Positions 228 through 61,369 of a stretch of DNA of 64,000 nucleotides are shown here, one piece after another (position 1 is the first letter of the stretch; each line of letters starts with the position of its first letter). The notes under the pieces were generated by a model. That model ran no database searches, was not told the DNA's origin, and was given only the letters and a program-made list of their open reading frames with translations. A program made the translations under genes and the position numbers. The DNA lies in NCBI RefSeq assembly GCF_006345805.1, contig NC_043013.1, forward strand, positions 33,728,001 to 33,792,000. The letters run 5' to 3'. Origin of the DNA: Octopus sinensis (Eukaryota).

Positions 228-242
228 TCATGTTCTACCTTA

Positions 243-857
243 AGGCGGTAAGCTGGCAGAAACGTTAACACGACGAAATGGTTACCGGTATTTCGTCTAT
301 AGTTTCATCCTTTCGGGGTCGATTAAATTAGCACCAGTTACGCACTGGACTGGGGTCGACATAATCGACATAATCCGTTTGTCTGTCCTTGTTTGAGCCC
401 TCTGTGTGTAGCCCTTTGTGGGCAATAAAGAAATAAGAAGCGTTAGCACGCCGGGCGAAATGATTAGTGATATTTCGTCTGCCGTTAAGTTCTGAGTTCA
501 AATTCCGCCGAGGTCGACTTTGCCTTTCATCCTTTCGGGGTCGATAAATTAAGTACCAGTTCCGCACTGGGATCGATGTAATCGACTTAATCCGTTTGTC
601 TGTCCTTGTCTGTCTCCTCTATGTTTAGCCCCTTGTGGGCAATAAAGAAATAAAAAACGTTAGCACGTCGGTCAAAATGCTTAGCGGGATTTCGCCCCAC
701 CTTCCCGTTCTGAATCCAAATTTAGTCAAGATCACCAATGCCCCTTATCCTTTCGGGGGTCGATGAAATAAGTGGCAGCCGAGTAGCAAGGTCAGTTTAA
801 TCGAATTACCTATCCTCCTAAGTTGTTGGTCCTCAGCCAAAATTTGAAATCGATATT
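243..857 (+). mobile_element. Nested/tandem array of three SINE-A units
   Basis: Two units end AATAAAGAAATA (424-435, 641-652), each followed at once by a unit starting at AGAA(A/G)CGTTAGCACG; the last unit has the A2 tail. Confidence 0.85.
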
Positions 858-911
858 ACATTCGTTACCACCATCACCACCATCACCACCACCACCACCA
901 TGACTAATACT

Positions 912-5534: not shown

Positions 5535-5585
<51 letters not shown>

Positions 5586-6355
5586 AGTAGTTGTGTGTGG
5601 CGGTAGTGGTCATGATGATGGTGGTGGTGGTGGTGGTGGTGGTACTGATGGTTGCGATGGTGGCGGCAGTGGATTGGTAGAATCGTAAGAGCGTCGTACA
5701 AAATGACTGAACAATATTTATTCCCGCGAAAATCAATTTCGTCATTCATCCATCTGGGGTCCCTTAAGTAAGGTACCAGTGAAGACGTTTTAGTGCTTTA
5801 TGGTATCGACTGATCGTCTTCCCTGAAAACTGCTGGCTTTGTGGCTTTGTGGCTAAATTCGTAACAATTAATTATTGGTGAACAACATATCTTCCTTAGG
5901 TTCAAGCAAAACGTTGACTGCTGAGAGAATTTAAGTTTTTGAAGCTCTTTTCGGTAACCTTCGCATATCAATGACCTCTGCTTGTCAAATGTTGAACTCT
6001 TTTAAACATCAGTGAGAAGAAGGGATTTATTTATTGCTAGAAAAGCTAAACTCTTTCTCTCTGTCTCCCTTTGCCTCTTCCTCTCTCTCTCTCTCTCCCC
6101 CCTTTTCTTGTTCTCTCTTGCCCTTTCTACTCTATTTGGCTGTTAAGCTCGCTACGTAAGAGACTGAAGGTTCGAGATTTTTGTGCGTTGCACTTATTAT
6201 ATTTTGAAAAGCGCAAGCATACGAGAATCCTGGACTTTGTGTCAATTATGTTGTTTCACACACATACACACACACACACACAATCACAAATCAAACACAG
6301 ACACATACACATACAAACACTCACACACACACAATACGCACACATATACATACAG

Positions 6356-6390
<35 letters not shown>

Positions 6391-6811
6391 TATCTATATG
6401 CTCTTATATCACCCGTGACTATCTGTGGTTAGTACATGCACGTGTGGATTAGTGTAGGAGCGAATAAACACCCTGTTTATTATGTCTGTATAGAGATTCC
6501 AAGCTTTTAACTATCTCCGTTTGCGTGTATGTGTGTGTATGTGAGTGTGAGTGTGTGTAAATATGAGTGCGTGAAAACTGTAATGGAAGTCGCTATACTT
6601 CCATTTTACAAGAGGACACTACACCGCGGTAGAGAAATTGGTGAAAATTGGTACGTTTGAAAGCCATACGAGAAGTATTTAAACACTAAAGCGACAGTAA
6701 GGTATAATAGTCGAACGGAGAGTGGTAGTGGTAGTAGTAGTAGTAGTAGGGTTGGTGGCGGAGGAAATGTAATGATGTGAGAAGAAAGCAGAGGAGCATT
6801 TGCAGTGGAAG

Positions 6812-6845
<34 letters not shown>

Positions 6846-7049
6846 TGGGGGAGCGTTTAGTTATATTGTAGTGTTAGTTTCAATCGATGCAAAATACACT
6901 AATGCGACTTTGGATGGGGAAAAGACGATGCAGTGTTTGAAATAAACGAGCTGTTAACATGTCTGATGCAGAGTGTGCTTCTGCTAGCGATCGCGGTCAT
7001 CGTCGTGTTTGGATTAACCCTATAGACAACACACACACTTTGCACCGTG

Positions 7050-7360
7050 TCAATCGTCGTTTGTAAATAGGAAAGGTGTGTGGGTGGGGTGCGAGGGGGA
7101 GTGAGTAAATGGAAGGTGAAAGGCGGCGGTTAGGTGGACGGGAGTTCTTATGATTCTGCAGCAAATTCTAATTCTAATGCAGGTTTATCTATTTGCATGT
7201 GTCTGCGGTTGAGTTGCGAGGTCGACCTGACGTGTGAAGGGTCTTATAAAAGAGGTTAATCTCTATCTGACTATAACAGTGTCAAATCACCATTTACCCA
7301 TTGTAAAAGAGACTCGTGTTAACAGGTTGGGTGACGTCATTGTGTATTGTAAAGGTCAAC
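7050..7360 (+). promoter_or_regulatory. Possible Pol II promoter/enhancer (motif cluster in unique sequence)
   Basis: ATTTGCAT (7191-7198), palindrome AGGTCGACCT (7219-7228), TATAAAAG (7245-7252), TGACGTCA (7332-7339), AAAGGTCA (7351-7358). Motifs only, no transcript evidence. Confidence 0.3.
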
Positions 7361-7689
7361 ACAGTCTATTCAATAACTGTAATGGTGCCATCAATTTAGT
7401 TACTTTTATATAACAATATTTGTAGTTATATTGCTATCGTTATTACAGCAATTATCTTCTTTTAACGTTATTATAAACAGCGTTTTGTTGTTGTTGCTGC
7501 TGTTGTTGTTGTTGTTGTTATATAAATTATCGATTTTATTTCTGCCATTTCACTACCGATCTTAATGCACATTTGTATTTTCCTTCCTTTAGCTGCCCTT
7601 ATTAGCCTCATTAGCAGCACAATTACCTCCATCATCAATTTAATATCACCATTATGCTTGAGAAAGCAATTATTAATGATAATAATATT

Positions 7690-7748
<59 letters not shown>

Positions 7749-8160
7749 TGTTGACGATGATGATGACGACGATGATGATGATGGTGATGATGATGACGAT
7801 GATGATAACAACGACGACGATGATGATGATGATGATGATATTCATGGCGATGGCGGTGGTGGTGAAGATGAAGGTGATATCGACAGTAGTGATGATGGTG
7901 ATGATGGCAATGATGATGATGATACGTTAACGATGATAATGTTGCTGACGACGACGATGACGATGATGGTGATGGTAATGATGATGATGATGATGATGTT
8001 GATGATAATGATGATAATACTGGTGACGGCGACGACGACGATGATGGTGTTGGTAATGATGATGATGATGATGATGATGTTGGCGGCGTTGACGATGACG
8101 GTGATGGTGATGGTGATAGTAATGATGATGATGATGTTGATGATGATAATGAGTGTCATT
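7690..8160. repeat. (AAT)n followed by cryptic (GAT/GAC/GGT)n
   Basis: Direct reading; source of the poly-N/D/M ORFs. Confidence 0.95.
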
Positions 8161-8919
8161 GTGATTAGGACAATGCTGATGCTAACGCTATTAACACTTT
8201 TATTATTGTTTTGATCGGGAATGGTACAGCAGAAATGTTATCTCCAACTGTTAACATAAATTTTAAAGGATCACTAAACCCTTTGATGTTCGTCGTCAGT
8301 CGTTGAAAATTCTCCTCGGACAATTTATTGTCTGTAATTCTACAATATTCTCTTCAATAATCGTGTCGTTTCTAATTTTTAGAAATTATCCTCCAGTAAT
8401 TCTGTGATATTGCCTGTCCATGTATAACTGTATGGCCTGCAGATATTTGCTGTTTATGCTATTTGCGCTTTTACAGTTCTACGGCAATCGCTTCAATCGG
8501 TGTTTCGTTTAAAATTGGACAGAATAAAACGTCGACATATGTAGCGTTAGTTAATGTGGTGATGGTGGCGCTGGTTGCTTTTGTTGTTGGTGTTGCTTGT
8601 CGATGTATAAATTCACGTATCCACAACATTTATCATTTAGATTTGTATGCATAATAGATTCCATATTGTTTGCGCCACACACCTGCCCTGGTGCAAACCT
8701 TCATTGCCCGTTTTAATTCATTTCTCCATAGCTGTAAATTTCTGTATAACCCCACAATACTTGACACGCCGTCAAGGTATTGTCTCCGGGTATATACTGT
8801 ATAAATGTGTGTATGTGTACGTGCATTTATGCATATAATTCATATAAAAACATACATACATATCTATCTATCGTCTGTTTGTCTAACTGTCCGTTCATAT
8901 ACACACACACACATACATA

Positions 8920-8956
<37 letters not shown>

Positions 8957-8958
<2 letters not shown>

Positions 8959-9164
8959 CAATGCTGATTCGCTAGCTTCTGCACGCATTTTTTTCTCTCC
9001 TTGTTTCTCTCCGGGTTTCTTTTCTGTGTATCTTTCTGTTGAAGAACGTAGGCTCGAAACGTAAAATACTTGTTTTATTTATATTCCTGAGCGCCATACT
9101 AATACAATGTTTGTTTGTATTCCACCTGCCTTCGTCTTTTGTTTATTTTCATAAAGCTTCCCGT

Positions 9165-9166: not shown

Positions 9167-9200
<34 letters not shown>

Positions 9201-9225
9201 AATATATATATATAATTATATATAT

Positions 9226-9229
<4 letters not shown>

Positions 9230-9256
<27 letters not shown>

Positions 9257-9266
9257 TGGATAGATG

Positions 9267-9341
<75 letters not shown>

Positions 9342-9342
9342 G
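9230..9342. repeat. (TAGA)n microsatellite
   Basis: Direct reading. Confidence 0.95.
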
Positions 9343-9362
9343 AGTGTGTGTTTTAGTGACAG

Positions 9363-9566
9363 TGTTTGTTCACCCATCATTACTTGACAACCAGTGTTGG
9401 AGTGTTTACGTCCCCGTAACCTAGTGGTTAGGCGAAATGACAGATAGAATAAGTACTAGACTTTAAAAAAAAACAAATCCTGGGATCGAATTGTTCGACG
9501 AATGCACTTCAAGGCGGTGTTCCTGCATGGCTGCAGTAAGCTGATTGAAACAATTAAAAAAAAAGA
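9363..9566 (+). mobile_element. SINE-B 3' module
   Basis: CTTGACAACC..TGTTTACGTCCCCGTAAC..GAATAAGTACTAG..AAGGCGGTG..GCATGGCTGCAG. Confidence 0.8.
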
Positions 9567-9702
9567 AGAAAAAGGAATATGTATTTACGTGTCCAAACTT
9601 ACTTAAGTGTGGAGGGTTTCGTGCAAATGTTTCGTGAGTGATGGGCTTGGAATTCGTGGCCTTTGAAGCATTCTTGTAACATTCAACAGATTAAAAAGTG
9701 AA

Positions 9703-9965
9703 AATGGCTTTGTGGTTAAAAAGTTTGTTTCAGAACCACGTTATTACGAGTTCAGACTTAATGCGAGGTACCTTGGGCTAGTGTCTGTTCCTATAACTAA
9801 CCCGTGTGAGGGAATTTTGCCTGCGGAAACTGCGTGTAAGACTATCGTATATAAGTCCTACACCAAACTTTATATGTATAAGTACTGGACTTAATTTCTT
9901 CGTGTAAATTCTTGAATGCTGTCTCCAAGAATGGTCGCAGTCTAATGACTAGAACAAGTGAAAGA
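9703..9965 (+). mobile_element. Old, internally deleted SINE-B
   Basis: GGCTTTGTGGTTAA head, ACCTTGGGC.AGTGTC CORE-like part, ATGGTCGCAGTCTAATGAC tail. Confidence 0.6.
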
Positions 9966-10051
9966 CCAAAAGAGTACTACTCATATGTTGAATTCTATTT
10001 CTCCAGTTTCTGGTACTGAAGCTGTACCTATGTATGTATGTCATTGTTTAG

Positions 10052-10152
10052 TTTTATTTCAAGATTTCTTGCCAATAGAGAAAGAGACGGTTTTTAACCT
10101 AGATCCAAGGCTCCTTCATTGGAATTTCAACATCAGTAACAGGGTACTTTTG
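10052..10152. repeat. Interspersed ~100 bp repeat, copy 1 (copy 2 at 10720-10820), next to (TATG)n
   Basis: TCAAGATTTCTTGCCAATAG...ACAGGGTA.TTTTG shared by both copies. Confidence 0.8.
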
Positions 10153-10719
10153 TTTCTGTATATATATGTATGTATATATATATATGTGCAGATTTGTTTG
10201 ATTTGCTTTATATATGTATATTCATGCATACAGTTGCATATATAAACATGCTCATATGTATTAGATGACAAACTTCTAGAAAATTTTACTGATTTTTACA
10301 GTTCGAATTAGCTTTCTCCTTTCTGGTTTTGAGAAGCATAATTTCTCAAGATTGATGTTTAGGCAGTGTGTTACATATCCCAGTGCCCCAATAATTAAAG
10401 GTATAAACCTGAACTCAACAGGTTTCTCAACAGTTCAGCATATGTATTTTCTTTTTCAATGATCTGCGGTTTATGTTCAAATCCGCTGGGCAGTTATTTT
10501 CCACAACTGTGCACAGTTCCTCTTCTCTATCCCAAATCATTATATCAAGTCTGTTGTGCTTAAATTTTATTGAGGTCTTCACTAGGACATTCTACCAGTA
10601 TTCCTTTTCATAATGAGTGGCTATCGCTTCTACCATACTGTGCCTCACATTCCCGGTATAAACCTGAATATGTATATCTTAATATGTATGTATGTATGCA
10701 TGTATATGTCATTAATCAG

Positions 10720-10820
10720 TTTTATCTCAAGATTTCTTGCCAATAGCGAAAGCGCCGATTTCTAAACTAGAATCAATGGTTTGTCAGTGAAATTTCGATA
10801 TCAATAACAGGGTATTTTTG
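10720..10820. repeat. Interspersed ~100 bp repeat, copy 2
   Basis: Direct repeat of 10052-10152. Confidence 0.8.
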
Positions 10821-12812
10821 TATGTATGTATGTATGTATGTATGTATGTATGTATGTATGTATGTAGGTATGCATGCACGTATGTACGTACGTAAGTTAT
10901 TCTTTCAGTGTTATTTAAGTTCTTGAGCTGTTGATGCATACACCCAAGTATGTGCATCTATTCACATAAGAACATCAGATGAACATTTGTATGCATGTAT
11001 GTATGTATGCATCACCTATACTCTTGGCCAAAATATTCTACGGACATATTTATTTTCTTATTTCTCCAAAATATGCACGTATGCTTTCCTGTTAATAGCT
11101 ATAATACAATTTATGTTCTTTAGTTATACAACATTTATCCGTTGTAGGGATTTTTTTCTTTACAAAATTCTCGACTTATGTTGTACAGTTCTCGAGTGAT
11201 GAAAAGATTTACTCACTACTTCGAAATTAAGCCATCGTAAAATCATTAATTATTTTCAGATTACATATCAGCCTCATTAACGTTTGCATGTGTGTAAATA
11301 CACATATTTTAATTTTTGATTATATTTATGAAGTCTTGTCAAACGAATTTGGTTCAGCATTGTTCAGCCGTTCCAAAGTGTATTTTTTTTCTAGTGAATA
11401 GGCTTAATGAGAGCTATTAAACAGTTAGTAGCTACTTAAGCAAATATTAACATGGCAGTTAAGAAACTTAGCCTGTGATACGGAAGTTTTAATACAAGCA
11501 ATAAACAAGGAATCTACACATACATAAAAAGCACACTTGAGCACATGCACTCACACACGCACTTGCACACGCAAACGCACATGCATATATATATACTCAC
11601 AAATATAGCAAATATGGCGACGGTGACAACACTTCTCATTGAATGTCTAACTATTTCTATAGTTAATGGGTATTAAAGATTTTTAATTAGCAACTAAAAC
11701 CCTCATATTTCAATAGCACCGATCTTTTCTATGAAGCTAGTAATATTGTGCCTGCTAGTGACTTAAATAGATTTCCTGCATATCTATAAACGCATAAAAT
11801 ATTTTTAATTATATATATTCATGGGTGTGCTAGGATGTCTGTGTGGCGTGTGTTTTTGTGTGTGTCGGTTTGCATTCGTGTAGGCATATTTAGTCTCCTA
11901 TATTCCTCACGCAATATATATATACACAAATATATATGCATACATATGCATATAAGTATATATATATATATATACATTTGCATATATATATATATATATA
12001 TATATACATGCACATACATGCACGCGCACGAGCATGTGTATGTATTTGTGTGTCTATGTATGTTCGTGCATCTGTACATGTCAGAAGTCGGCCTAGTAAT
12101 ATGTACAATCCTTGCTTACGTACAAATCAAAGATACCGTTTTGACCAAAATGATTATTTTCAGCTTTTACCACGATTATTACATGTATGTCTCTTCTCAG
12201 TCAAATGCCATGCAGAATCATGACAATTGGCATTGTGGACGCACTGAAAAACAATAGTTATTTCATGATTAGTATACATATATTTGTGTTTCTAGGCGAT
12301 GTGTTATAATTAGCTTGATTTAAATCAGGTACACTTGAACAGCTAACAAGACCAGCTTTAGAAATACAGACTCGATTACTAGTTAACATTTCAAGGGATT
12401 ACTGACATATAAGAGCTTCTTATAGCGTCTAGTTTCAACTTTGCAAGTATAATGCGGTTCTCTGGAAAATACTTAAATGCAATAGCTATACTATTTTTGC
12501 TGAGGCTCAACTAATCGTAATTTTTTTCTCAAATTTCTCATGTTTTCGGTCTAGATATAAAGCTAGCTTTGTATCTTAACTGTCGTTTGCTAGTGTGTCT
12601 TTGCCGAAAACGTTGTTTTCTACAGAGTAGATATCTTAGAATTTTTTCATCAACCATATTAGTTGTATAGTCAATCCACAGCAGTATGTTAATACAAAAG
12701 AGAGTTTGGTTGATTACAGCATTTGTTAATTCAAGGAGCTACACGTCATTCAGTGTCTACAATGTATATACATAAATACATAGTTACAGACAAGATGTTC
12801 CCGTTAACTCTC

Positions 12813-22425: not shown

Positions 22426-23709
22426 CACTCCAGGTTTTAGATTTGTCAAACATTTTCTCCTCTAGGCACCAGGCCCGAATTTTTGGAGGGGGCCAGTTGT
22501 AAAAACACTTTTGGAAAGAAAGAATCGATGGCAATTACATTTGCGTGTGAATTTGTTTGCTTTGGTAGGGTGAGTGTGCGTGCGCGCATGCGCATTACTC
22601 TATACGAGAGAGTAAGCTGGCAGAACCGTTAGCGATATATAGTATATCTTGTATGCACCGTTAGATGTACGACTGTGGTTGATGAATTTAGAGCTTCATG
22701 TATCGTATTATCCTCATCCAGTTTGTTTGAAGCTTAGTAGTTTAGCGACAGCTTTACTCAGTGCTATGATATATAACGCAATCGTAGAAGGAACTTCGAT
22801 AAAATTTATATCGTTTGTTATTACATGTGTTTCATCATTGTCATTCTTTAGAACTGTTCATTTGATATCTGAGGAACAACTGGCTTCTTTTCCTCAACGA
22901 ATCATCGGGGAAGTCTATTGCATTATCTTACTGAGTGCTAAAATCTAAAGTCGGATAGATGGCGAGACATTTTATAGGTATTTTGAGAGGGGACTAGAAA
23001 GAATGCAAAAGATTGAGAGAGATTAAATGTCACGAAGAAACAAGATAAAAAGAAAGGGAAGAGAAAATTACAGAAAGAAGAGAGAAAACGAGAGAGAGAA
23101 GAGAAAGAAAAACGAGAAAAACAAGACAAGATTGTAATTAAAGAAAGGAGGAAAGGTCTTAAAGAAAAAAGTAAAATGTATAATCGAAAAATATTTTGAA
23201 ATATTTAGGCAAAATAAAATACTAAAATGAATAAAAGATATAATGGAGAATGTGACAGAGGAAGAGAAAAGCTTATTTGTGTTCTATGCTAACTATTTTC
23301 TTCAGATAATCCCAATGTTTTGCTTCTGTGTATCACATAAACGAACGCATTCGCACATTAAAAGCAAAACGGTAACAATCAAGTCATTGCCTTCGGACAA
23401 ATAAACACTACTAAAACTAGTGGTTTCATTCCGTTTGTTTCTCTTATGTTTCTATCTATCTGTCTATATGTGTATGTCTGTATAATTTGTTGTGTTTTTC
23501 TAATTTTTGCCGTTCTACATTTGGCAAATTCTTTGATTGTTCTGTCACTGTTTGTCAATTTCGCTTCTACATCCGGCTTCAACAATTCCATTGCTGTTTT
23601 GAATCTCTCTTCTTAATATGTAATTTAGTGATTCTCCTGTCTCTAATGGTTAATTCTATCATTGTATCCGGTTTCCCTAAGATCATTCTTCCTCTACTGC
23701 ATTATTATA

Positions 23710-24046
23710 TATTTCTTTACTACCCACGAGGGGCTAAACACAGAGGGTACAAACAAGGACATACAAAGGGATTAAGTCGATTACATCGACCCCAGTGCGT
23801 AACTGGTACTTAATTTATCGACCCCGAAAGGATGAAAAATTTTATATATATATCTATACCCCCCCCCCACATATATATGTATATATACATACATACATAA
23901 ATATATATTTATTTACATAATTTATCGACCCCGAAAGGATGAAAGGCAAAGTCGACCTTGGTGGAATTTGAACCCAGAACGTAACGGCAGACGAAATACC
24001 GCTAAGCATTTCGCCCGGTGTGCTAACGTTTCTGCCAGCTCGCCGC
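23710..24046 (-). mobile_element. Full SINE-A (A1 tail) with 13 bp TSD, interrupted by an 80 bp filler
   Basis: TSD CTGCATTATTATA at 23697-23709 and 24047-24059; internal 27 bp direct repeat 23811-23837 / 23918-23944. Confidence 0.9.
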
Positions 24047-24605
24047 CTGCATTATTATAAATCCGCTGTTACATGAGCTAAATTTAACAACAGTACGGTA
24101 ATATATAATTTGAGGACTATTTTTGCTACTACTTCTAACAACTTGAAGGTATCTTTCGATGAACTAGGGACCGAACGATTTGGTCTGAGTCCTTCATCGA
24201 GTTAAGTCAGTCTGCGTGTCGCGCTGTTTTGTCTCTCTTAATTAACCCCCGCAACCCTTTCTGAATACATCCATCTATATTTTTCTTTCAACTTCTCTCT
24301 CAGTGTCTTTCCAATATGCTTGTCTTCCTTTCTCTTACCATACATAACTCTCTTAGCATTTCCCCTACGCACGTTTCTCTTTTCTTCCCTCATACACACA
24401 TATTCTCATGCTATAATTCACTCCACTTCTTCTTCACTTGGTTTCCCTGGCAAACCAAATATATATCCTTCTACCGTTACTTTTAATCTCCCCTTCAATA
24501 TTTCCTTTTCCACTTTCACTTTCTCTTTCGCTCCAGCATTTTTTCTTTTTTTAACCCCCTTCTCTATCTCTCTTTCTCCTCTCTCTCTTTATCTATCTAT
24601 CTATC

Positions 24606-30323: not shown

Positions 30324-30627
30324 ATTCCTTTACTTTTGCGAGTTTGAGCTCGAGAGCTGCGGCCATGTTGGAGCACCGTTTATGCAGAAGCCTCTTTCCA
30401 TTGCAAATTAATTTAATTTCGAAATTATGTTCAGCATTAAGATATCGTAATATCTAAGATATATCGTAGTATCTAAGATATTATCGTGTTTAGCAAGGCA
30501 ATTTACAAAGGGAATGACGAATGTTTTCCTGTTCAACAAAAGATTTTTAGTTTTTACCTTTCCAATCATTGTAGACAAAAGATAGGGGGAGATGTTATAT
30601 GAACGGCAATGTAATATACATGGTTTA

Positions 30628-31070
30628 AAGCGGCGAACCGGCAGAGCAAAATGCATAGCGGTATTTCGTCCGACGGCGAGCTGGCAGAAACGTTAGCACG
30701 CTGGGCGAAATGCTTCGCGGTATTTCGTCTGCCTTTACGTTGTGAGTTCAAATTCCGCCGAGGTCGACTTTGCCTTTCATCCTTTCGGGGTCGATAAATT
30801 AAGTACCAGTTACGAACTGGGGTCGATGTAATCGACTTAATACCTACGTCTGTCCTTGTTTGTTCCCTCTGTGTTTAGCCCCTTGTGGGTAATAAAGAAA
30901 TAGGTATTTCGTCCGACCTTACGTTCTGAGTTCAAGTGCCACCGGGGTCGACTTTACCTTTCATCCTTACGGGGTCGATAAAAATAAGTACCAATTGAAC
31001 ACTGGGGTGTGTGTAATCGACATATCCCCTCTCCTGAGATTTGTGCCAAAAAGTTGAAGCTAATATAACA
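30628..31070 (+). mobile_element. Young SINE-A1 (30675-30902) inserted into the head of an older SINE-A2
   Basis: Perfect 15 bp TSD GGTATTTCGTCCGAC at 30660-30674 and 30903-30917. Confidence 0.9.
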
Positions 31071-34455: not shown

Positions 34456-35048
34456 AAGGCGGTGAGCTGGCAGAATCGTTAGCACGCCGGGCGAACTGCT
34501 TAGCGGTATTTCGTCTGCCGCTACGTTCTGAGTTCAAATTCCGCCGAGGTTGACTTTGCCTTTCATCCTTTTGGGGTTGATTAAATAAGTACCAGTTACG
34601 CACTGGTGTCGATATAATCGACTTAATCCGTTTATCTGTCCTTGTTTGTCTCTTCTGTGTGTAGCTCATTGTGGGCAGTAATGAAATAGCTATTTCGTCC
34701 GCCGTTACATTCTAAGTTCAAATTCCACCGAGGTCGACTTTGCCTTTCATCCTTTCGAGGTCGATAAATTAAGTACCAGTTGAGTACTGGGGTCAATGTA
34801 ATTGACCTAATCCCATTGTCTATCCATGGTTGTCCCCACTATGTTTAGCCCCATGTGGGCAATAATGAAATAAGAAATGTTAGCACGCCGGGCGAAATGC
34901 ATAGCGGCATTTCGTCTGATTTTTACGTTTTCAATTCAGATTCCACCGAGATCAACTTTACTTTTACTCATTTCGGTGTCGCTAAAACAAGTACTAGTGG
35001 TCGATTTGATAAAAATTTTCGGGTTTGTGCCAAAATATGAAACAAATT
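34456..35048 (+). mobile_element. Nested/tandem array of three SINE-A units
   Basis: Junctions at 34688/34689 (GAAATA|GCTATTTCGTC) and 34872/34873 (GAAATA|AGAAATGTTAGCACG). Confidence 0.85.
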
Positions 35049-36585
35049 TAATAAATAATAAAAAGAAAAAAAAGGCAAGTGTTATTTAAAAATAAACACT
35101 GCATTTTAATTTTGTCTCCGCGTGTAAGGGATACTATACTAGTTATATTTTTAGTGTTATCGTTCTCATCAGTGAGATACAGATTTTATTTCATATACAA
35201 AATTAGTGATTATGTAATCTGTTTGTTTCTGTTCCTCAAATATTTTCGGTCTAATACTAAACAGTGGCCTGGCAAAGATCTTGGCCCCAGATTAAACTGG
35301 GTTGAATTTATATTACAAGATTATACATTAGCTAGCTCCTTTCAAAATATTTGAGCAGACTCATTAAATATATAGTAATTGCGTGGATTTATTTAACTAA
35401 GTTCAATAATGTTATGTGAAATTAACCACGTCAAAAATTAATCCTGTAGCTTTTAAATAGATTTTCGAGAAATTATCAATCTTTTATCTGTGAGAATCTT
35501 TAACAATTACGGCAAATGATTGCTTTTTCGTCTCAAAAGAAAATTTTAACTACAAGCTAAAATTCTTGGGAACTTTGTTTTGTTGTATATAAAAACCTAT
35601 ATCGAATGAACAAAGCAATATTGAATACACGAATCTATAGCAATTATGTATAATAAAATTAAAACATGGCCATATATGTTCACCACTATTTTACTAGCAA
35701 CAAAACACAAGCTCCATATTTTCCCCAAAGCATCTAAATGAATTTTGAATTGTCTCATGTGTTTGAAAATCAGTAACAGTGTCCGCTTGGTTTCTATTCA
35801 ATATCTAGTCAGAAGAGAAATTTCAATGACCCGAAAACACTTTCTTTGTATATTTCTTTTCTATGTTGTTCTTATTTTTGAACACGCCGTTCAGCAAATA
35901 ATCTCTTATCTTATCCTAACAAATAGCTTTGCAGCAACGGTAATACTACAACTTAACAGTTAATCCAATGACAACACTGTTAAGATAATTAGCAGATTAT
36001 TTTTACAAATAATTTGAATTAGGTAACATCGACAATTGCAAAGATCAAAAGGATAAGACGATGAAGAGGAGAAGGGCGACGTCGATAATAATAAATTATG
36101 ACGACGACGACAACAATGATGCTGGTGTTGGTTATAATTACATCGTTGAGTATTGATGTTAGCGATGATTGCAGTTTTGATGATGACATTCAAAGGAGAG
36201 AAAATAATTACAATGACTATAATAACGAATGTAATGATGATGGTGATGACGACGATGATAATGGCGATGACGGCGATGTTCTTTTTTAGCTGGTGGAGAC
36301 AGGTTTGTGCTACAAAAGGTTTCAATTGTAATTGTTTTGTTTCTTTTGTCGGTTTTAGTGCACGTACAAATATATTATCAAAACTGACCTTCGTTTCTTA
36401 TGACATCAGAGTGGGGTTAGCAAAAGATTAAGCAACTATATCTTGCAAATAAATCAAAAACACTGTTTATATTAATGGCTTCTTAAAAAAGAAAAGACGT
36501 AAATAGCTCAAAATATATTGGTATTAACACATAAGCACACCGAATGAAATACTACACGTATGCAAATATATATATATATATATAC

Positions 36586-55016: not shown

Positions 55017-55107
<91 letters not shown>
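55017..55107. repeat. (TATC)n, left flank of the LINE insertion
   Basis: Direct reading. Confidence 0.97.
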
Positions 55108-55975
<868 letters not shown>

Positions 55976-58620: not shown

Positions 58621-60661
58621 TTAATACAAATTAATCTGCAAGCCTAACCAAACACGTAATTATGCACATAAGCAATCTAACCAGTTTTGGAATATTTCAA
58701 ACACTTTAGTTAAAATTATTCCCTTAGATAATCAAACTTTTCTGTATATAAGCATATTTGTAATGTGTTGTGAAATATTATAATCATTCCTTATATAGAA
58801 CAGTTTTTATGGAGAAAACTGCTTATATAGAACCAACAAGGGGAATAATTTTCATGGAAACAGAAAAATGGCCAGCTAATTCCATCCACCAAGTATGTTA
58901 GAAGTAGCCATACATAAAACCACCCTCATACCTAAACATGTATTACAGAATTTTCAATAGTATTATTACTAATACTGTCTTATGCCTAACATTGCTCAAA
59001 CTATTGTTTCCTTTAACGTAAATATGCTTTAACTTTCTAGTGTTGCTGTCATCACTCCTAATAATTATAGCTTTATTTCCCCTTCCTGTTACCTTTTGGA
59101 AACTAACCACTCAGTATCAATGAGATGTGCAGTCTACTAACTCCGCATACCAGCTTTTCTTCAAATCAATTTTATCTCTTAACATTCAATAATACACATT
59201 ATTTAGAAAATCTAGTATTACATTCAAGATATACAGCGAATTTACAATCAAATTTAAATAATTCTTCCCGCGGTGGAAACCCTGCAGTATTTGTACCTCG
59301 GAGGAAAACGAAATAATTTTAAATAAGGTCAAATAAGGACAACCTTTTTGTCATTTTACAACCATAAAATTCTAAAAACGTAGACATTTCCAACTTATCT
59401 GCTATTCCTAATGAGCAAACTTAAGTCATATAACAGAATTGATAATCTTATTTCTAGGTAATTGTTTCGATTCTCTGCGCTCTGAGCTAAATCCAACTTA
59501 AGATTTCATCTTTCTGAGTTGATAAAATACGATAAAAAGTCCATGATGGAGGATTGGCAGAATTGTTAGTATGTCGGATTAAAAATCTCTTTTAGTATTT
59601 GATTCCAGATTTTTATGCCCTAGTTTCTTGGATGGTAGACTTAACTGTCGCTCGGTTGACTACCATCACTTGCTTTTTAAGAGCCTTTAGCACTTTCACT
59701 CGGTTGCAAGCATCCGCGGCATGTCAGCTGTTTAGCACAAGTATTGGATAAAGACTACATACCTAAATATTGGGTAAAGACTCAACTCATCTTGCTATTA
59801 TAGATTTCTATAATCTATTCATTGATGAATTAATCAACTACGAAATATTAATGTTTTTCAAGCTAATGTTCTTTACTTTTAATTCTACCTTTTTTTTTAT
59901 TAGCTATTGCTGCCTTATTTTTAATCAGAAATTTTTTAGTATTTTCTACTTTAGACTGGGGTCGACCAAAGTATTGTGAGTGGATTTGGTACACGGAAAT
60001 TGAAAGAAGCCTATCGTATATGTATGTATCGATGCGAGTTTGTGTGTGTGTGTGTGTACTTGAGTCGGTTCATTCCACTAAAATTCCTCACGGTGGTACC
60101 CAACATGGCCGCAGTCTAATGACTGAAATAAATACAAGGTTCTTAGTTTATTTGTTTGAATTTAATTATATCAATCCTGTACCGGTCTATTTGTTTTCTC
60201 TCTGTATGTATCCTTTCTTGGAAATAAAATTTGCAGTTGCAGACCCGAAGAGAGTTGCTGTTCTGCCGTATCCCAAAGAGCACAAAATGTGTCACAATTG
60301 CATCTCTAAGATTCTCTGGGAAGCTTAGGTAATGCATAGCATATGCATATATATATATATATATATATATATCTATATATATATATATTGATATCTGACG
60401 TTTTACGATGACAAAAATGCTATGGAGTAAGAGCGAAGCTAAACTTAATTTGAACGAACCTAGTTATTCATTGCTATGTAATTTACCTACTTCAGAAAGA
60501 AACAATCTAATTAAAACCTGACTCAGGAAAACGTCATAAAAATTAAAGAAGATAATTATTACAGTGTAGATATATTTCATGGTGAAAGTGAGTAAAGAAG
60601 GGGTCTACATTAGTGACTGAGTTGCGTTATCAGACCACCGGGTCTGAATAAATATAATAGT

Positions 60662-60894
60662 TATTTCTTTATTGCCCACAAGGGGCTAAGCACAGAAAGG
60701 ACAAACAAGGACAGACAAAGGGATTAAGTTGATTACATCGACCCCAGTGCGTAACTGGTACTTAATTTATCGACCCCGAAAGCATAAAAGACAAAGTCGA
60801 CCTCGGCGGAATTTGAACTCACAACGTAACGGCAGACGAAATACGGCTACGCATTTCGCCCGGCATGCTAACTTTTCTGCCAGCTCGCCGCATT
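60662..60894 (-). mobile_element. Full SINE-A (A1 tail) with 16-17 bp TSD
   Basis: TGAATAAATATAATAG(T) at 60645-60661 and 60895-60911. Confidence 0.92.
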
Positions 60895-61369
60895 TGAATA
60901 AATATAATAGTATTAGCACCAAGAAGTGATCAGGAATAAACCAGCTTTAGGGTAGTTACGTTGTGACATGTCTTAACTTCAAACGGCAACGAACGCACGC
61001 AAAAAGAGAGAAATAAGAAAATGTAGGGATACATTAATGCCTGTATATAATAAACGAACGGGTGTTCATGTCAATGTAAATTAATGTGTAGTAATTTAAG
61101 AATAAGTGTGTACACATTCGAATTCACGTTAAGATTATACATAAACATTTACATTCAACCTTGCTCTAAATTAATCTGAAATTTGTTAACCCCTACACAT
61201 AAATTTTGGCCCATACAACCGAAGAATACGAATTTAAACTTAGCTGCAACTATCACCATCTTACATGATATGATACAATATATGAAGCTTTGTAACACTG
61301 TTACAATATCTTTGGATATCTCGTCATACCATTCTTATAGACTGTTGTATATTACGTAATATGTTAAAT

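What the first reader, a model, noticed from the sequence alone, without database searches (positions are those of the whole stretch)
387..433. The SINE-A1 3' tail matches the 3' end of the Tx1-like LINE in this window
Seen: SINE 387-433 CCTTG---TTTGAGCCCTCTGTGTGTAGCCCTTTGTGGGCAATAAAGAAA against LINE 55803-55852 CCTTGTAATTTGTCCCATCTGTGTGCAGCCCTGTATGGCCAATAAAGAAA gives 40 of 47 aligned positions with one 3 nt gap (hand alignment), and both end at the same point. A1 copies carry 13-17 bp TSDs. Established: SINEs share 3' ends with the LINE that mobilises them (Ohshima and Okada), and Tx1-partnered SINEs are uncommon. Inference: this abundant SINE subfamily uses a Tx1-clade LINE. The same head and core also occur with unrelated A2/A3 tails ending in (ATT)n, so tails have been swapped between partner LINEs.
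Basis: partly seen in the sequence, partly recalled or inferred. Interest (0 to 1): 0.75.

Follow-up and report, generated by a model that had tools for sequence, protein, structure and literature searches.

The report
Octopus SINE shares LINE 3' tail
A short mobile element (SINE) that is common in this octopus-like genome ends in the same ~50-base tail as a family of L1/Tx1-type LINE retrotransposons of octopods, so that LINE family very probably copies it; this is a real and probably undescribed pair, but of a well-known kind.

Summary
SINE 387-433 and LINE end 55803-55852 align at 40/47 positions with one 3-nt gap. The consensus of all seven A1-tailed SINE copies in the window gives the same 40/47, against 20.7±1.2 of 42 in shuffles (35/42 observed ungapped).

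The window "LINE" is only a 744-bp 5'-truncated 3' fragment (55108-55852) with no RT, sitting inside a (TATC)n microsatellite.

Related LINE copies fetched from Argonauta hians, Octopus sinensis and host-contaminated metagenomes carry the same terminal block directly after their own ORF2 and 3'UTR. The O. sinensis copy matches the SINE tail best (40/45). The tail is therefore a conserved 3' end of an octopod LINE lineage, not a stray SINE piece.

A full-length Argonauta copy has ORF1 with a CCHC knuckle and ORF2 with APE, RT and zf-RVT. Its best solved-structure match is human L1 ORF2p, so it belongs to the L1 superfamily. Tx1 membership could not be tested by phylogeny because no references were obtainable; it rests on published mollusc classifications.

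The tail can form a GC hairpin with one compensatory swap. Three A1 copies have perfect 13-, 14- and 17-bp target-site duplications (TSDs).

Verdict: a real SINE-LINE tail partnership, a new member of a known kind, of moderate interest.

The parts
387..435 (+). 3' tail of SINE-A1 copy c2 (the finding); true end is …AATAAAGAAATA at 435
   Evidence: 40/47 to LINE end 55803-55852
242..435 (+). SINE-A1 copy c2: full head, internal deletion of about 50 nt, A1 tail; first unit of the array c2-c3-c4
   Evidence: cons 105-232 = window 303-435, 92.9% to consensus
436..652 (+). SINE-A1 copy c3, 5'-truncated at AGAAGCGTTAGC, abutting the tail of c2
   Evidence: 94.9% to consensus
653..862 (+). Older SINE copy c4 with A2-type tail (…GCCAAAATTTGAAATCGATATT), truncated at the same head position; last unit of the array
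   Evidence: 74.6% to the A1 consensus over head and core
23710..24045 (-). SINE-A1 copy c7/c8, split by a 76-bp AT/GT-rich insertion (23838-23913); perfect 13-bp TSD TATAATAATGCAG at 24047-24059 and 23697-23709
   Evidence: 96% to consensus
30674..30902 (+). SINE-A1 copy c9, full length, nested in the head of an older A2-tailed SINE (c10: 30627-30673 + 30903-~31065); perfect 14-bp TSD GGTATTTCGTCCGA at 30660-30673 and 30903-30916
   Evidence: 95.6% to consensus
34457..34688 (+). SINE-A1 copy c11, full length; first unit of the array c11-c12-c13
   Evidence: 91.4%
34691..34872 (+). SINE-A1 copy c12, begins at GCTATTTCGTCC (same head position as the c9/c10 junction)
   Evidence: 184-bp period; 89.6%
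34873..35050 (+). Older SINE copy c13 with A2-type tail, truncated at AGAAATGTTAGC; last unit of the array
   Evidence: 81.6%
60662..60894 (-). Solitary SINE-A1 copy c16; perfect 17-bp TSD ACTATTATATTTATTCA at 60895-60911 and 60645-60661
   Evidence: 94.8%
55108..55854 (+). 5'-truncated LINE fragment: ORF2 C-terminal remnant 55109-55468 (one internal stop) and 3'UTR 55469-55854; no RT or endonuclease in the window
   Evidence: 67.5% aa identity to P0154 over 120 aa
55803..55852 (+). LINE 3'-terminal block homologous to the SINE-A1 tail
55017..55107 (+). (ATCT)n microsatellite, 22.8 units, immediately 5' of the LINE fragment
55855..55975 (+). (TATC)n microsatellite, 30.2 units, immediately 3' of the LINE fragment: the LINE sits inside one microsatellite

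Best explanation
The last ~45-55 nt of SINE-A1 are homologous to the conserved 3'-terminal block of an octopod LINE lineage. That lineage belongs to the L1 superfamily and is probably Tx1 clade. Its layout is ORF1 with a CCHC knuckle, then ORF2 = APE endonuclease + reverse transcriptase + zf-RVT zinc domain.

Shown: the homology, the LINE architecture, the TSDs, and conservation of the tail in several LINE families and SINE families of Octopus and Argonauta.

Inferred mechanism:
- The SINE is transcribed from its own head; a B-box-like GAGTTCAAATTCC is present.
- Its RNA is recognised in trans by the LINE ORF2 protein through the shared tail. The tail can fold into a short GC hairpin (GCCC-CUUGU-GGGC in the SINE, GGCC-CUUGU-GGCY in the LINEs), extended by pairing of UCUGUGUU with AAUAAAGA.
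- Reverse transcription starts at the exact 3' end …GAAAU(A) by target-primed reverse transcription, which leaves 13-17 bp TSDs.
- This is 'stringent' tail recognition, as in L2, CR1 and RTE partners, rather than poly(A) recognition as in mammalian L1.

The window's own LINE copy is a dead fragment and is not itself the source. The partner is the lineage, and the O. sinensis family seen in L007 is the best match so far.
For: - Tail match: 40/47 for one copy and for the 7-copy consensus, far outside the shuffles.
- The SINE-A1 consensus tail against independent LINE 3' ends gives L007 O. sinensis 40/45, L006 A. hians 42/51, L005 45/52 and the L006 fragment 38/43. Local scores are 36-55 against a shuffle mean of about 15 (sd about 2.6, max 34).
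- In every one of those LINEs the block lies at the very end of the element's own 3'UTR, 226-384 nt after the ORF2 stop. No SINE core precedes it, and the upstream UTR is alignable among L003, L005, L006 and L010.
- Those LINEs are homologous to the window fragment: 67.5% aa to P0154, 73-75% to P0001/P0002, and 50% between P0154 and L007.
- Architecture from the near-full-length Argonauta copy in L006: ORF1 639 aa with CHRCGLPGHIRSGC; Exo_endo_phos E 5e-11; RVT_1 E 2e-18; zf-RVT E 6e-8.
- Best PDB match is human L1 ORF2p at E 5e-22, against R2 at 1e-13.
- Hairpin: 93.5% of cells paired against 6-48% when the partners are slid. Pair 36-46 is G-C in 24 sequences (LINEs and Argonauta SINEs) and C-G in all 7 window A1 SINEs. 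The extended 12-bp stem is 86% paired against 35-53% slid. The hairpin appears in the MFE fold of 4 of 5 tails.
- Perfect TSDs of 13, 14 and 17 bp.
- A1 copies are 90-96% identical to their consensus, while A2-tailed copies are 75-89% identical to it over head and core. A1 is therefore the younger, coherent subfamily.
- About 25 SINE copies with the same tail lie in 43 kb of Argonauta DNA. They include a different, simple tRNA-plus-tail SINE.
- Literature: L1-Tx1 LINEs are recently active in O. vulgaris, with 13 families and 421 insertions (PMC13282606). Tree-based classification of mollusc LINEs, including O. sinensis, names Tx1 as the L1-superfamily clade (PMC10294476).
Against: - No functional test exists. 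Tail sharing shows common origin and is the accepted indicator of partnership, but it does not prove mobilisation.
- The Tx1 clade was not tested by phylogeny here.
- The window's own LINE copy matches the SINE less well than the O. sinensis one. Its hairpin is degraded to 3 bp with a 6-nt loop.
- No LINE was found that carries the SINE-A1 version of the hairpin (C-G at pair 36-46). The exact source family is therefore unidentified; an exact-pattern scan found none.
- Covariation amounts to essentially one evolutionary event on a 4-bp stem.
- Thermodynamic z-scores of the tails are unremarkable (-1.8 to +0.7).
- ARAGORN and Rfam do not recognise the SINE head as a tRNA, so Pol III transcription is inferred from a B-box-like motif only.
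- A more distant relative (L011, 43% aa identity) lacks the tail.
Confidence: 0.75

Rival explanations
1. The LINE lineage is the partner, but it is not Tx1. It would belong to another branch of the L1 superfamily, either a diverse non-mammalian L1 or an undescribed sister clade.
For: - No Tx1 reference could be placed in a tree. The homologue search returned no source names, and the supplements with reference sets were not held.
- The CX2CX8HX4C zf-RVT motif and the CCHC ORF1 are shared by plant L1 and other non-mammalian L1 as well as Tx1 (PMC5203782).
- Solitary SINE-A1 copies show ordinary AT-rich targets rather than strict site specificity.
Against: - Published tree-based classification of 86,488 mollusc LINE loci, including O. 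sinensis, names Tx1 as the L1-superfamily clade (PMC10294476).
- Octopus annotations list L1-Tx1 and no plain L1 among the recently active LINE families in Table 1 (PMC13282606).
- Two 5'-truncated LINE copies are flanked on both sides by one microsatellite: (TATC)n in the window and (ATT)n in L006 4735-4900. This recalls the microsatellite-targeting Tx1 families Kibi and Koshi (PMC4494074).
Confidence: 0.2
2. The tail is shared by descent, but the A1 SINEs are actually mobilised by a LINE of a different clade that carries a closer copy of the tail. The L1-type lineage would be a bystander that acquired the same tail.
For: - No LINE with the exact SINE-A1 hairpin version was found.
- Only a handful of LINE 3' ends from octopods could be inspected.
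Against: - Six LINE ends were inspected: five from the fetched loci plus the window fragment. They span about 50-70% aa identity, come from at least two species, and all carry the block.
- In the 64-kb window nothing else matches the tail.
- The one-pair difference is a compensated change that keeps the hairpin.
Confidence: 0.07
3. The end of the window LINE is a 5'-truncated SINE-A1 fragment that landed next to the LINE, or a chimera made by template switching. On this view the LINE has no such tail of its own.
For: - SINE copies in this window do abut other elements directly.
- Only one LINE copy is in the window.
Against: - The same block ends the 3'UTR of related LINEs in L005, L006 (twice), L007 and L008, each without SINE core sequence upstream.
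- The window LINE's block differs from every SINE copy at the positions where the other LINEs also differ (GGCC rather than GGGC).
- The whole unit 55108-55854 is bracketed by one microsatellite.
Confidence: 0.02
4. The similarity is chance or compositional, between two T/G-rich, A-tailed sequences.
For: The window is AT-rich and full of simple repeats.
Against: - 35/42 observed against a maximum of 26 in 2000 dinucleotide-preserving shuffles. No other 42-mer in 128 kb of sequence reaches 26.
- The match is repeated in independent loci from other species.
Confidence: 0.01

Closest known systems
Stringent-type SINE/LINE pairs with a common 3' tail (e.g. eel UnaSINE1/UnaL2, tortoise Pol III SINE/CR1; Ohshima and Okada; Kajikawa and Okada 2002, as cited in PMC3747384 and PMC4824008)
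   Same: A tRNA-like-headed SINE carries the last ~50 nt of a LINE. The shared block can form a conserved stem-loop just upstream of a short fixed 3' end. Copies carry TSDs.
   Different: The partner here is an L1-superfamily element (APE + RT + zf-RVT), not L2, CR1 or RTE. No terminal tandem repeat is obligatory. No retrotransposition assay exists.
SINEU mobilised by Tx1-Mar in crocodilians (Kojima 2015, PMC4494074)
   Same: A non-autonomous element attributed to a Tx1-clade LINE. There is a tendency to insert into other repeats.
   Different: SINEU has snRNA-derived heads and poly(A) tails. Its link to Tx1 rests on shared target preference, not on a shared specific 3' tail. Here the link is a shared, structured tail, and target preference is only hinted at.
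Monocot L1 lineage with a conserved 3' end shared with maize and sorghum SINEs (Ohshima 2012, PMC3472496; review PMC3747384)
   Same: An L1-superfamily LINE that keeps a conserved, structured 3' end shared with SINEs. This implies stringent recognition inside a superfamily better known for poly(A) recognition.
   Different: Plants rather than cephalopods, and a different L1 branch. The sequences are unrelated.
Microsatellite-specific Tx1 families Kibi, Koshi and crocodilian (TTCC)n/(TTTC)n Tx1 (Kojima and Fujiwara 2004, as cited in PMC4494074)
   Same: LINE copies are embedded in a microsatellite, with the same repeat on both flanks: window (TATC)n, and Argonauta fragment (ATT)n.
   Different: Only 2 of 7 inspected LINE ends show this, and with different repeat units. 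The SINE copies are not in microsatellites. Specificity is not demonstrated.
Octopus tRNA-derived SINEs OK, OR1, OR2 (Ohshima and Okada 1994) and the 'tRNA-Deu/tRNA-Core' SINEs annotated in octopus genomes (PMC8967140)
   Same: Abundant octopus SINEs with conserved central domains. From memory, the core here (…GCCTTTCATCCTTTCGGGGTCGATAAATTAAGTACCAG…) resembles the Nin/Deu domain.
   Different: I could not compare sequences, because no SINEBase, Repbase or Dfam copy was available. Identity with a named family is therefore open. No partner LINE is reported for octopus SINEs in the papers I could search.

Membership tests
SINE (tRNA-type, SINE2) | Short, non-coding, multi-copy, flanked by target-site duplications | tested here: met
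   About 232-bp consensus. 16 copies or fragments lie in 64 kb, 7 of them with the A1 tail. Perfect 13-, 14- and 17-bp TSDs.
SINE (tRNA-type, SINE2) | 5' head derived from a tRNA, with internal Pol III A and B boxes | tested here: inconclusive
   A B-box-like GAGTTCAAATTCC is seen by eye. ARAGORN and Rfam give no tRNA match, even at E<=1 on the best copy.
SINE/LINE pair with common 3' tail (stringent type) | 3' end of the SINE homologous to the 3' end of a LINE in the same or a related genome, ending at the same point | tested here: met
   40/47 to the window LINE, 40/45 to O. sinensis L007, 42/51 and 45/52 to L006 and L005, all terminal.
SINE/LINE pair with common 3' tail (stringent type) | Conserved stem-loop in the shared tail | tested here: met
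   The 4-bp stem is 93.5% paired against 6-48% when slid, with one compensated G-C to C-G swap. The extended 12-bp stem is 86% paired. The evidence is modest: one event on a short stem.
SINE/LINE pair with common 3' tail (stringent type) | LINE protein mobilises RNA carrying the tail in trans | not testable with these tools
   Needs a retrotransposition assay.
L1 superfamily LINE | ORF2 with N-terminal APE endonuclease, RT and C-terminal cysteine-histidine domain; RT closest to L1 | tested here: met
   L006: Exo_endo_phos 5e-11, RVT_1 2e-18, zf-RVT 6e-8. Best PDB match is human L1 ORF2p at 5e-22, against R2 at 1e-13. The window fragment is homologous to the C-terminus of these proteins.
Tx1 clade | RT domain groups with Tx1L, Keno, Kibi and Koshi references in a phylogeny | not testable with these tools
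   No named reference sequences could be obtained. There is only literature support that mollusc and octopus L1-superfamily LINEs classify as Tx1 (PMC10294476, PMC13282606, PMC8967140).
Tx1 clade | Target-sequence preference (a specific repeat, gene or microsatellite) | tested here: inconclusive
   The window LINE lies inside (TATC)n, and an Argonauta LINE fragment lies inside (ATT)n. A1 SINEs join other SINE heads at two recurrent points, five junctions in all. Other LINE and SINE copies are in ordinary AT-rich DNA.
Tx1 clade | ORF1 of the RRM/zf-CCHC type rather than the mammalian L1 coiled-coil/RRM/CTD type | tested here: inconclusive
   The L006 ORF1 has one CCHC knuckle (zf-CCHC E 0.06, below threshold) and no Transposase_22 match. 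This type is said to be consistent with Tx1 but is not exclusive to it (PMC5203782).

The most novel reading that the evidence does not exclude
An octopod-specific Tx1-type LINE lineage uses stringent, hairpin-based recognition of a fixed 3' tail, which is unusual in the L1 superfamily. It has driven the large SINE expansion of octopods since before Argonauta and Octopus separated. Its integration machinery favours particular sites inside SINE heads and microsatellites, so that the SINEs build nested head-to-tail arrays.
Probability: 0.3. Interest if true: 0.65.

Novelty: new member of a known kind. Interest (0 to 1): 0.5.

Why it matters
SINEs make up more than a tenth of octopus genomes, and in O. 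vulgaris most families are listed as 'unclassified', with no partner LINE named in the papers I could search (PMC13282606, PMC8967140). Identifying the LINE lineage that shares their tail names the probable engine of that expansion.

It would also add an L1/Tx1-type element to the short list of L1-superfamily LINEs that recognise a specific structured 3' end rather than poly(A).

The proposed hairpin (GCCC-CUUGU-GGGC followed by AAUAAAGAAAU) is small and well defined. It can be tested directly by mutation and compensation in a retrotransposition assay.

The concept of SINE-LINE tail sharing is textbook. This is an addition to a known class rather than a new mechanism, and it may already be recorded in Repbase or Dfam, which I could not consult.

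Tried and rejected
1. Are the A2/A3 tails (…GGCCTTGTGCCAAAATTTGAAACTAATATT) diverged versions of the same LINE tail? By eye they share CCTTGTG and a GAAA end. Local alignment scores against five LINE tails and the A1 tail fall within dinucleotide-shuffle expectation (106-742 of 1000 shuffles at least as high). Rejected as unsupported.

2. Classifying the LINE as Tx1 by names of homologues. The profile search returned 479 hits, and the few source names among the 120 listed were uninformative ('hypothetical protein', 'exonuclease III'). Supplements that might hold Repbase Tx1 references were not held. No tree was made.

3. tRNA origin of the head. ARAGORN and Rfam (gathering threshold, then E<=1 on copy c9) gave nothing.

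4. Looking for a LINE with the exact SINE-A1 hairpin, and for more tails, in metagenome contigs. The exact 24-mer had 0 hits. The degenerate pattern had 71 hits, all chance matches in microbial contigs lacking the upstream block.

5. Does the tail reach beyond octopods? The one more distant full-length relative with flanks (L011, 43% aa identity) has no such tail.

6. Thermodynamic support for the hairpin. It is present in 4 of 5 MFE folds, but z-scores are ordinary. The structural argument therefore rests on conservation and on one compensated pair.

7. The idea that RNA 3'-end/target base pairing explains the recurrent SINE-in-SINE junctions. The junctions keep the complete tail plus the complete target sequence, so simple annealing does not explain them.
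Full report
**1. The observation**

They align at 40 of 47 SINE positions with a single 3-nt gap.

Anchored at the 3' end and without gaps, 35 of the last 42 bases agree. In 2000 dinucleotide-preserving shuffles of the 744-nt LINE fragment, the best 42-mer match found anywhere averaged 20.7 (sd 1.2, maximum 26). On both strands of the real window, the only 42-mers that reach 26 matches to the LINE end are the seven SINE tails of this type (31-35/42). BLAST of the LINE fragment against the window gives the same picture. Seven hits, each covering the last ~42 nt of both partners, are the only significant ones.

**2. The SINE**

Self-comparison finds 16 SINE copies or fragments in the window. Seven carry the 'A1' tail. 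On the + strand their AATAAAGAAA ends at 433, 650, 30900, 34686 and 34870; on the - strand at 23712 and 60664. All seven continue with TA (…GAAATA).

Their consensus is about 232 bp:
- a head AGGCGGCGAGCTGGCAGAAACGTTAGCACG…, with a B-box-like GAGTTCAAATTCC;
- a core …GACTTTGCCTTTCATCCTTTCGGGGTCGATAAATTAAGTACCAGTT…;
- the tail …CTGTCCTTGTTTGTCCCCTCTGTGTTTAGCCCCTTGTGGGCAATAAAGAAATA.

The consensus tail matches the window LINE at 40/47, as the single copy does, so the match does not fade at consensus level.

Three copies have perfect target-site duplications (TSDs): 17 bp (60895-60911 / 60645-60661), 13 bp (24047-24059 / 23697-23709) and 14 bp (30660-30673 / 30903-30916).

A1 copies are 90-96% identical to their consensus. 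Copies with the other tail (A2/A3: …GGCCTTGTGCCAAAATTTGAAACTAATATT, some followed by (ATT)n) are 75-89% identical over head and core. A1 is therefore the younger, coherent subfamily.

ARAGORN and Rfam do not call the head a tRNA. Its tRNA origin is plausible but was not shown here.

**3. The 'LINE' in the window**

Only a 744-bp piece is present (55108-55852/4). It holds about 120 codons of an ORF2 C-terminus with one internal stop, ending at 55468, followed by a 384-nt 3'UTR. It has no reverse transcriptase or endonuclease, so its clade cannot be read from the window.

The piece lies inside one microsatellite: (ATCT)n 55017-55107 on the 5' side and (TATC)n 55855-55975 on the 3' side.

**4. 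Relatives from elsewhere**

The C-terminal peptide finds P0001 and P0002 (73-75% identity; P0002 has zf-RVT). An exhaustive search with P0002 found longer relatives.

P0003 and its homologues include proteins from Argonauta hians and Octopus sinensis, so the family is octopod.

I fetched these loci: L005 (P0154, RT + zf-RVT), L006 (A. hians), L007 (O. sinensis), L008 (A. hians), and L003, L004, L009 and L010.

L006 holds a nearly full-length element:
- ORF1 5558-7477 (639 aa, one CCHC knuckle);
- ORF2 in two pieces, 7468-9099 and 9191-10969;
- a 226-nt 3'UTR.

Pfam finds Exo_endo_phos (5e-11), RVT_1 (2e-18) and zf-RVT (6e-8). The best solved structure is human L1 ORF2p (5e-22), ahead of R2 (1e-13). 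This is L1-superfamily architecture.

**5. The key result**

Every related LINE whose 3' end could be read finishes with the same block, directly at the end of its own 3'UTR:
- L005: …GTTTCCGGGCCCTTGTGGCCAATAAAAGAAATC(ATT)n
- L006: …CCCCTCTATGTTTTTGCCCTTGTGGCTAATAAAAGAAATA(ATT)4
- a second, 5'-truncated copy in L006: …GGACCCTTGTGGTCAATAAAAGAATT(ATT)17
- L007 (O. sinensis): …TTGTCCCCCTCTATGTTTGGGCCCTTGTGGCTAATAAAGAAATTGG
- L008: …CTGTGTCAGCCAGGTGGCTAAGAAAGAAATTT

The SINE-A1 consensus tail aligns to these ends as follows:

| LINE end | Identities |
|---|---|
| L007 | 40/45 |
| L006 | 42/51 |
| L005 | 45/52 |
| L006 fragment | 38/43 |
| L008 | 25/31 |

The local scores of the first four are 36-55, against a shuffle mean of about 15 (sd about 2.6, maximum 34). 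Only L008 falls within the shuffle range.

The upstream parts of the 3'UTRs of L003, L005, L006 and L010 are alignable with one another and run without a break into the block. No SINE core precedes it. The block is therefore the LINE lineage's own conserved 3' end. This removes the rival that the window copy merely abuts a SINE fragment.

The LINE families concerned differ by up to about 50% at the protein level. The tail is thus older than their divergence.

**6. Spread among SINEs**

The two Argonauta loci (43 kb) contain about 25 SINE copies ending …TTCGGCCCTTGTGGCTAATAGAGAAATCTAT. Some share core plus tail with the window SINE, at 71-75% identity over about 140 nt. Others are a different, simple tRNA-like head joined directly to the tail (L006 4900-5360).

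The partnership therefore involves several SINE families and predates the separation of the Argonauta and Octopus lineages. A more distant LINE relative (L011, 43% aa identity, organism unknown) has no such tail.

**7. Structure of the tail**

In an alignment of 7 LINE ends, 7 window SINE tails and 21 Argonauta SINE tails (A2), a 4-bp stem closes a CTTGT loop. The stem is GCCC…GGGC in the window SINE and GGCC…GGCY in the LINEs and Argonauta SINEs.
- 93.5% of cells pair, against 6-48% when the 3' partners are slid.
- The second pair is G-C in 24 sequences and C-G in all seven window SINEs, a compensated double change.
- The outer pair is G-U, G-C or A-U.

The stem can be extended by pairing TCTGTGTT with AATAAAGA. 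These 12 pairs are 86% paired, against 35-53% slid. The hairpin appears in 4 of 5 minimum-energy folds, though the energies are not unusual.

The structural evidence is modest. It amounts to one compensated event on a short stem, and the structure was derived from the same sequences. It does fit the stem-loop-plus-fixed-end design of stringent-type LINE tails. The block also contains AATAAA.

**8. Mechanism proposed**

Shown: tail homology, LINE architecture, TSDs, and conservation.

Inferred: SINE RNA is bound through the tail by the ORF2 protein of this LINE lineage. It is then reverse-transcribed from its exact 3' end at a nicked target, which gives 13-17 bp TSDs.

The dead fragment in the window is not the source element. 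No LINE with the SINE's own C-G version of the hairpin was found, so the precise source family in the host genome remains to be identified.

**9. Tx1 or not**

I could not obtain any named Tx1 or L1 reference other than human L1 from the PDB. The profile search gave no informative names, and the supplements were not held. The defining test, an RT phylogeny, was therefore not done.

Indirect support:
- A tree-based classification of 86,488 mollusc LINE loci that included O. sinensis names Tx1 as the L1-superfamily clade (PMC10294476).
- Octopus annotations list L1-Tx1, recently active in O. vulgaris (PMC13282606, PMC8967140).
- ORF1 proteins of the RRM/zf-CCHC kind are described as consistent with Tx1 (PMC5203782).
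- Two truncated LINE copies lie inside a microsatellite, as the Tx1 families Kibi and Koshi do (PMC4494074).

I put Tx1 membership at roughly three in four.

**10. The A2/A3 tails**

The same head and core do occur with another tail. That tail has no significant similarity to the LINE tails. No partner LINE for it was found, so 'tail swapping between partner LINEs' remains a reasonable but untested inference. It matches what has been proposed for other SINE superfamilies (PMC4824008).

**11. Comparison with what is known**

Tail sharing between SINEs and LINEs is long established; 58 pairs were listed in one survey (PMC3747384).
- Within the L1 superfamily it is unusual. One monocot L1 lineage with a conserved 3' end shared with SINEs is described (PMC3472496).
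- For Tx1, the published case is SINEU in crocodilians. It is tied to Tx1-Mar by shared target preference and has poly(A) tails (PMC4494074).
- I found no paper describing a partner LINE for octopus SINEs. Repbase, Dfam and SINEBase could not be consulted.

I therefore file this as a new member of a known kind. It is real and well supported, of moderate interest, and raised somewhat by the size of the octopus SINE expansion it may explain.

Noticed in passing
window 242-862; 30627-31065; 34457-35050: A1 SINEs form head-to-tail arrays: c2-c3-c4, c9 nested in c10, and c11-c12-c13. In all three the last unit is an older A2-tailed SINE. The downstream units start at only two head positions: AGAA(A/G)CGTTAGC (3 junctions) and G(G/C)TATTTCGTCC (2 junctions). 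c9 is a clean nested insertion with a 14-bp TSD. The other junctions look like the same event with the 5' junction resolved by homology between the new cDNA and the target head. This suggests a preferred target inside SINE heads.
   Followed up: partly
window 55017-55975; L006 4735-4900: The 5'-truncated LINE fragment in the window is flanked on both sides by (TATC)n. An independent 5'-truncated LINE fragment in Argonauta is flanked on both sides by (ATT)n. L005 and the main L006 copy also end in (ATT)n. This could reflect microsatellite targeting or tail-repeat priming.
   Followed up: partly
L006 4900-5360: Three tandem copies of a ~150-bp Argonauta SINE lie immediately upstream of the 5' end of the full-length LINE. 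The SINE has a clear tRNA-like head (…AGCTCAATTGGTAGAGCG…GGTTCAATCCC) joined directly to the LINE-type tail. The copies are separated by 7-8 bp (CATTTTGT / TATTTGT).
   Followed up: no
window 55631-55646 and 55742-55757: The LINE 3'UTR contains two copies of a small palindromic hairpin (CGATCCCTATTGATCG / CGATCCCGTTTGATCG) bracketing a T/C-rich low-complexity stretch. Relatives have CCCCC(C)TATTGGGG(G) at the corresponding place (L003, L005, L006, L010). This may be a second conserved UTR hairpin with different stem sequences.
   Followed up: no
window 23838-23913: SINE-A1 copy c7/c8 is interrupted by a 76-bp AT/GT-rich simple-sequence insertion containing a G10 run.
   Followed up: no
L011 786-807 and 7373-7394: A more distant full-length LINE relative (ORF1 + 1161-aa ORF2, 43% identity) is bracketed by a 22-bp direct repeat ACACCTGTGAACTGCGTGTCTT. 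It lies next to an LTR-retrotransposon pol gene. This could be a long TSD or a specific target inside another element.
   Followed up: no
window, whole: Simple-repeat density is extremely high (117 TRF rows in 64 kb). It includes six separate (TCTA)n-type arrays (9220, 24563, 38334, 51548, 55017, 55855) and many (AT)n and (ATT)n tracts.
   Followed up: no
L001 560-700: The metagenome contig that carries a relative of the LINE breaks off into a different SINE-like head (GGGTGGTGGATGGCAGAATTTGTAGAGCAGCGC…TTCAAATCCTGCCGAC). These 'metagenome' contigs therefore appear to be cephalopod host DNA.
   Followed up: no
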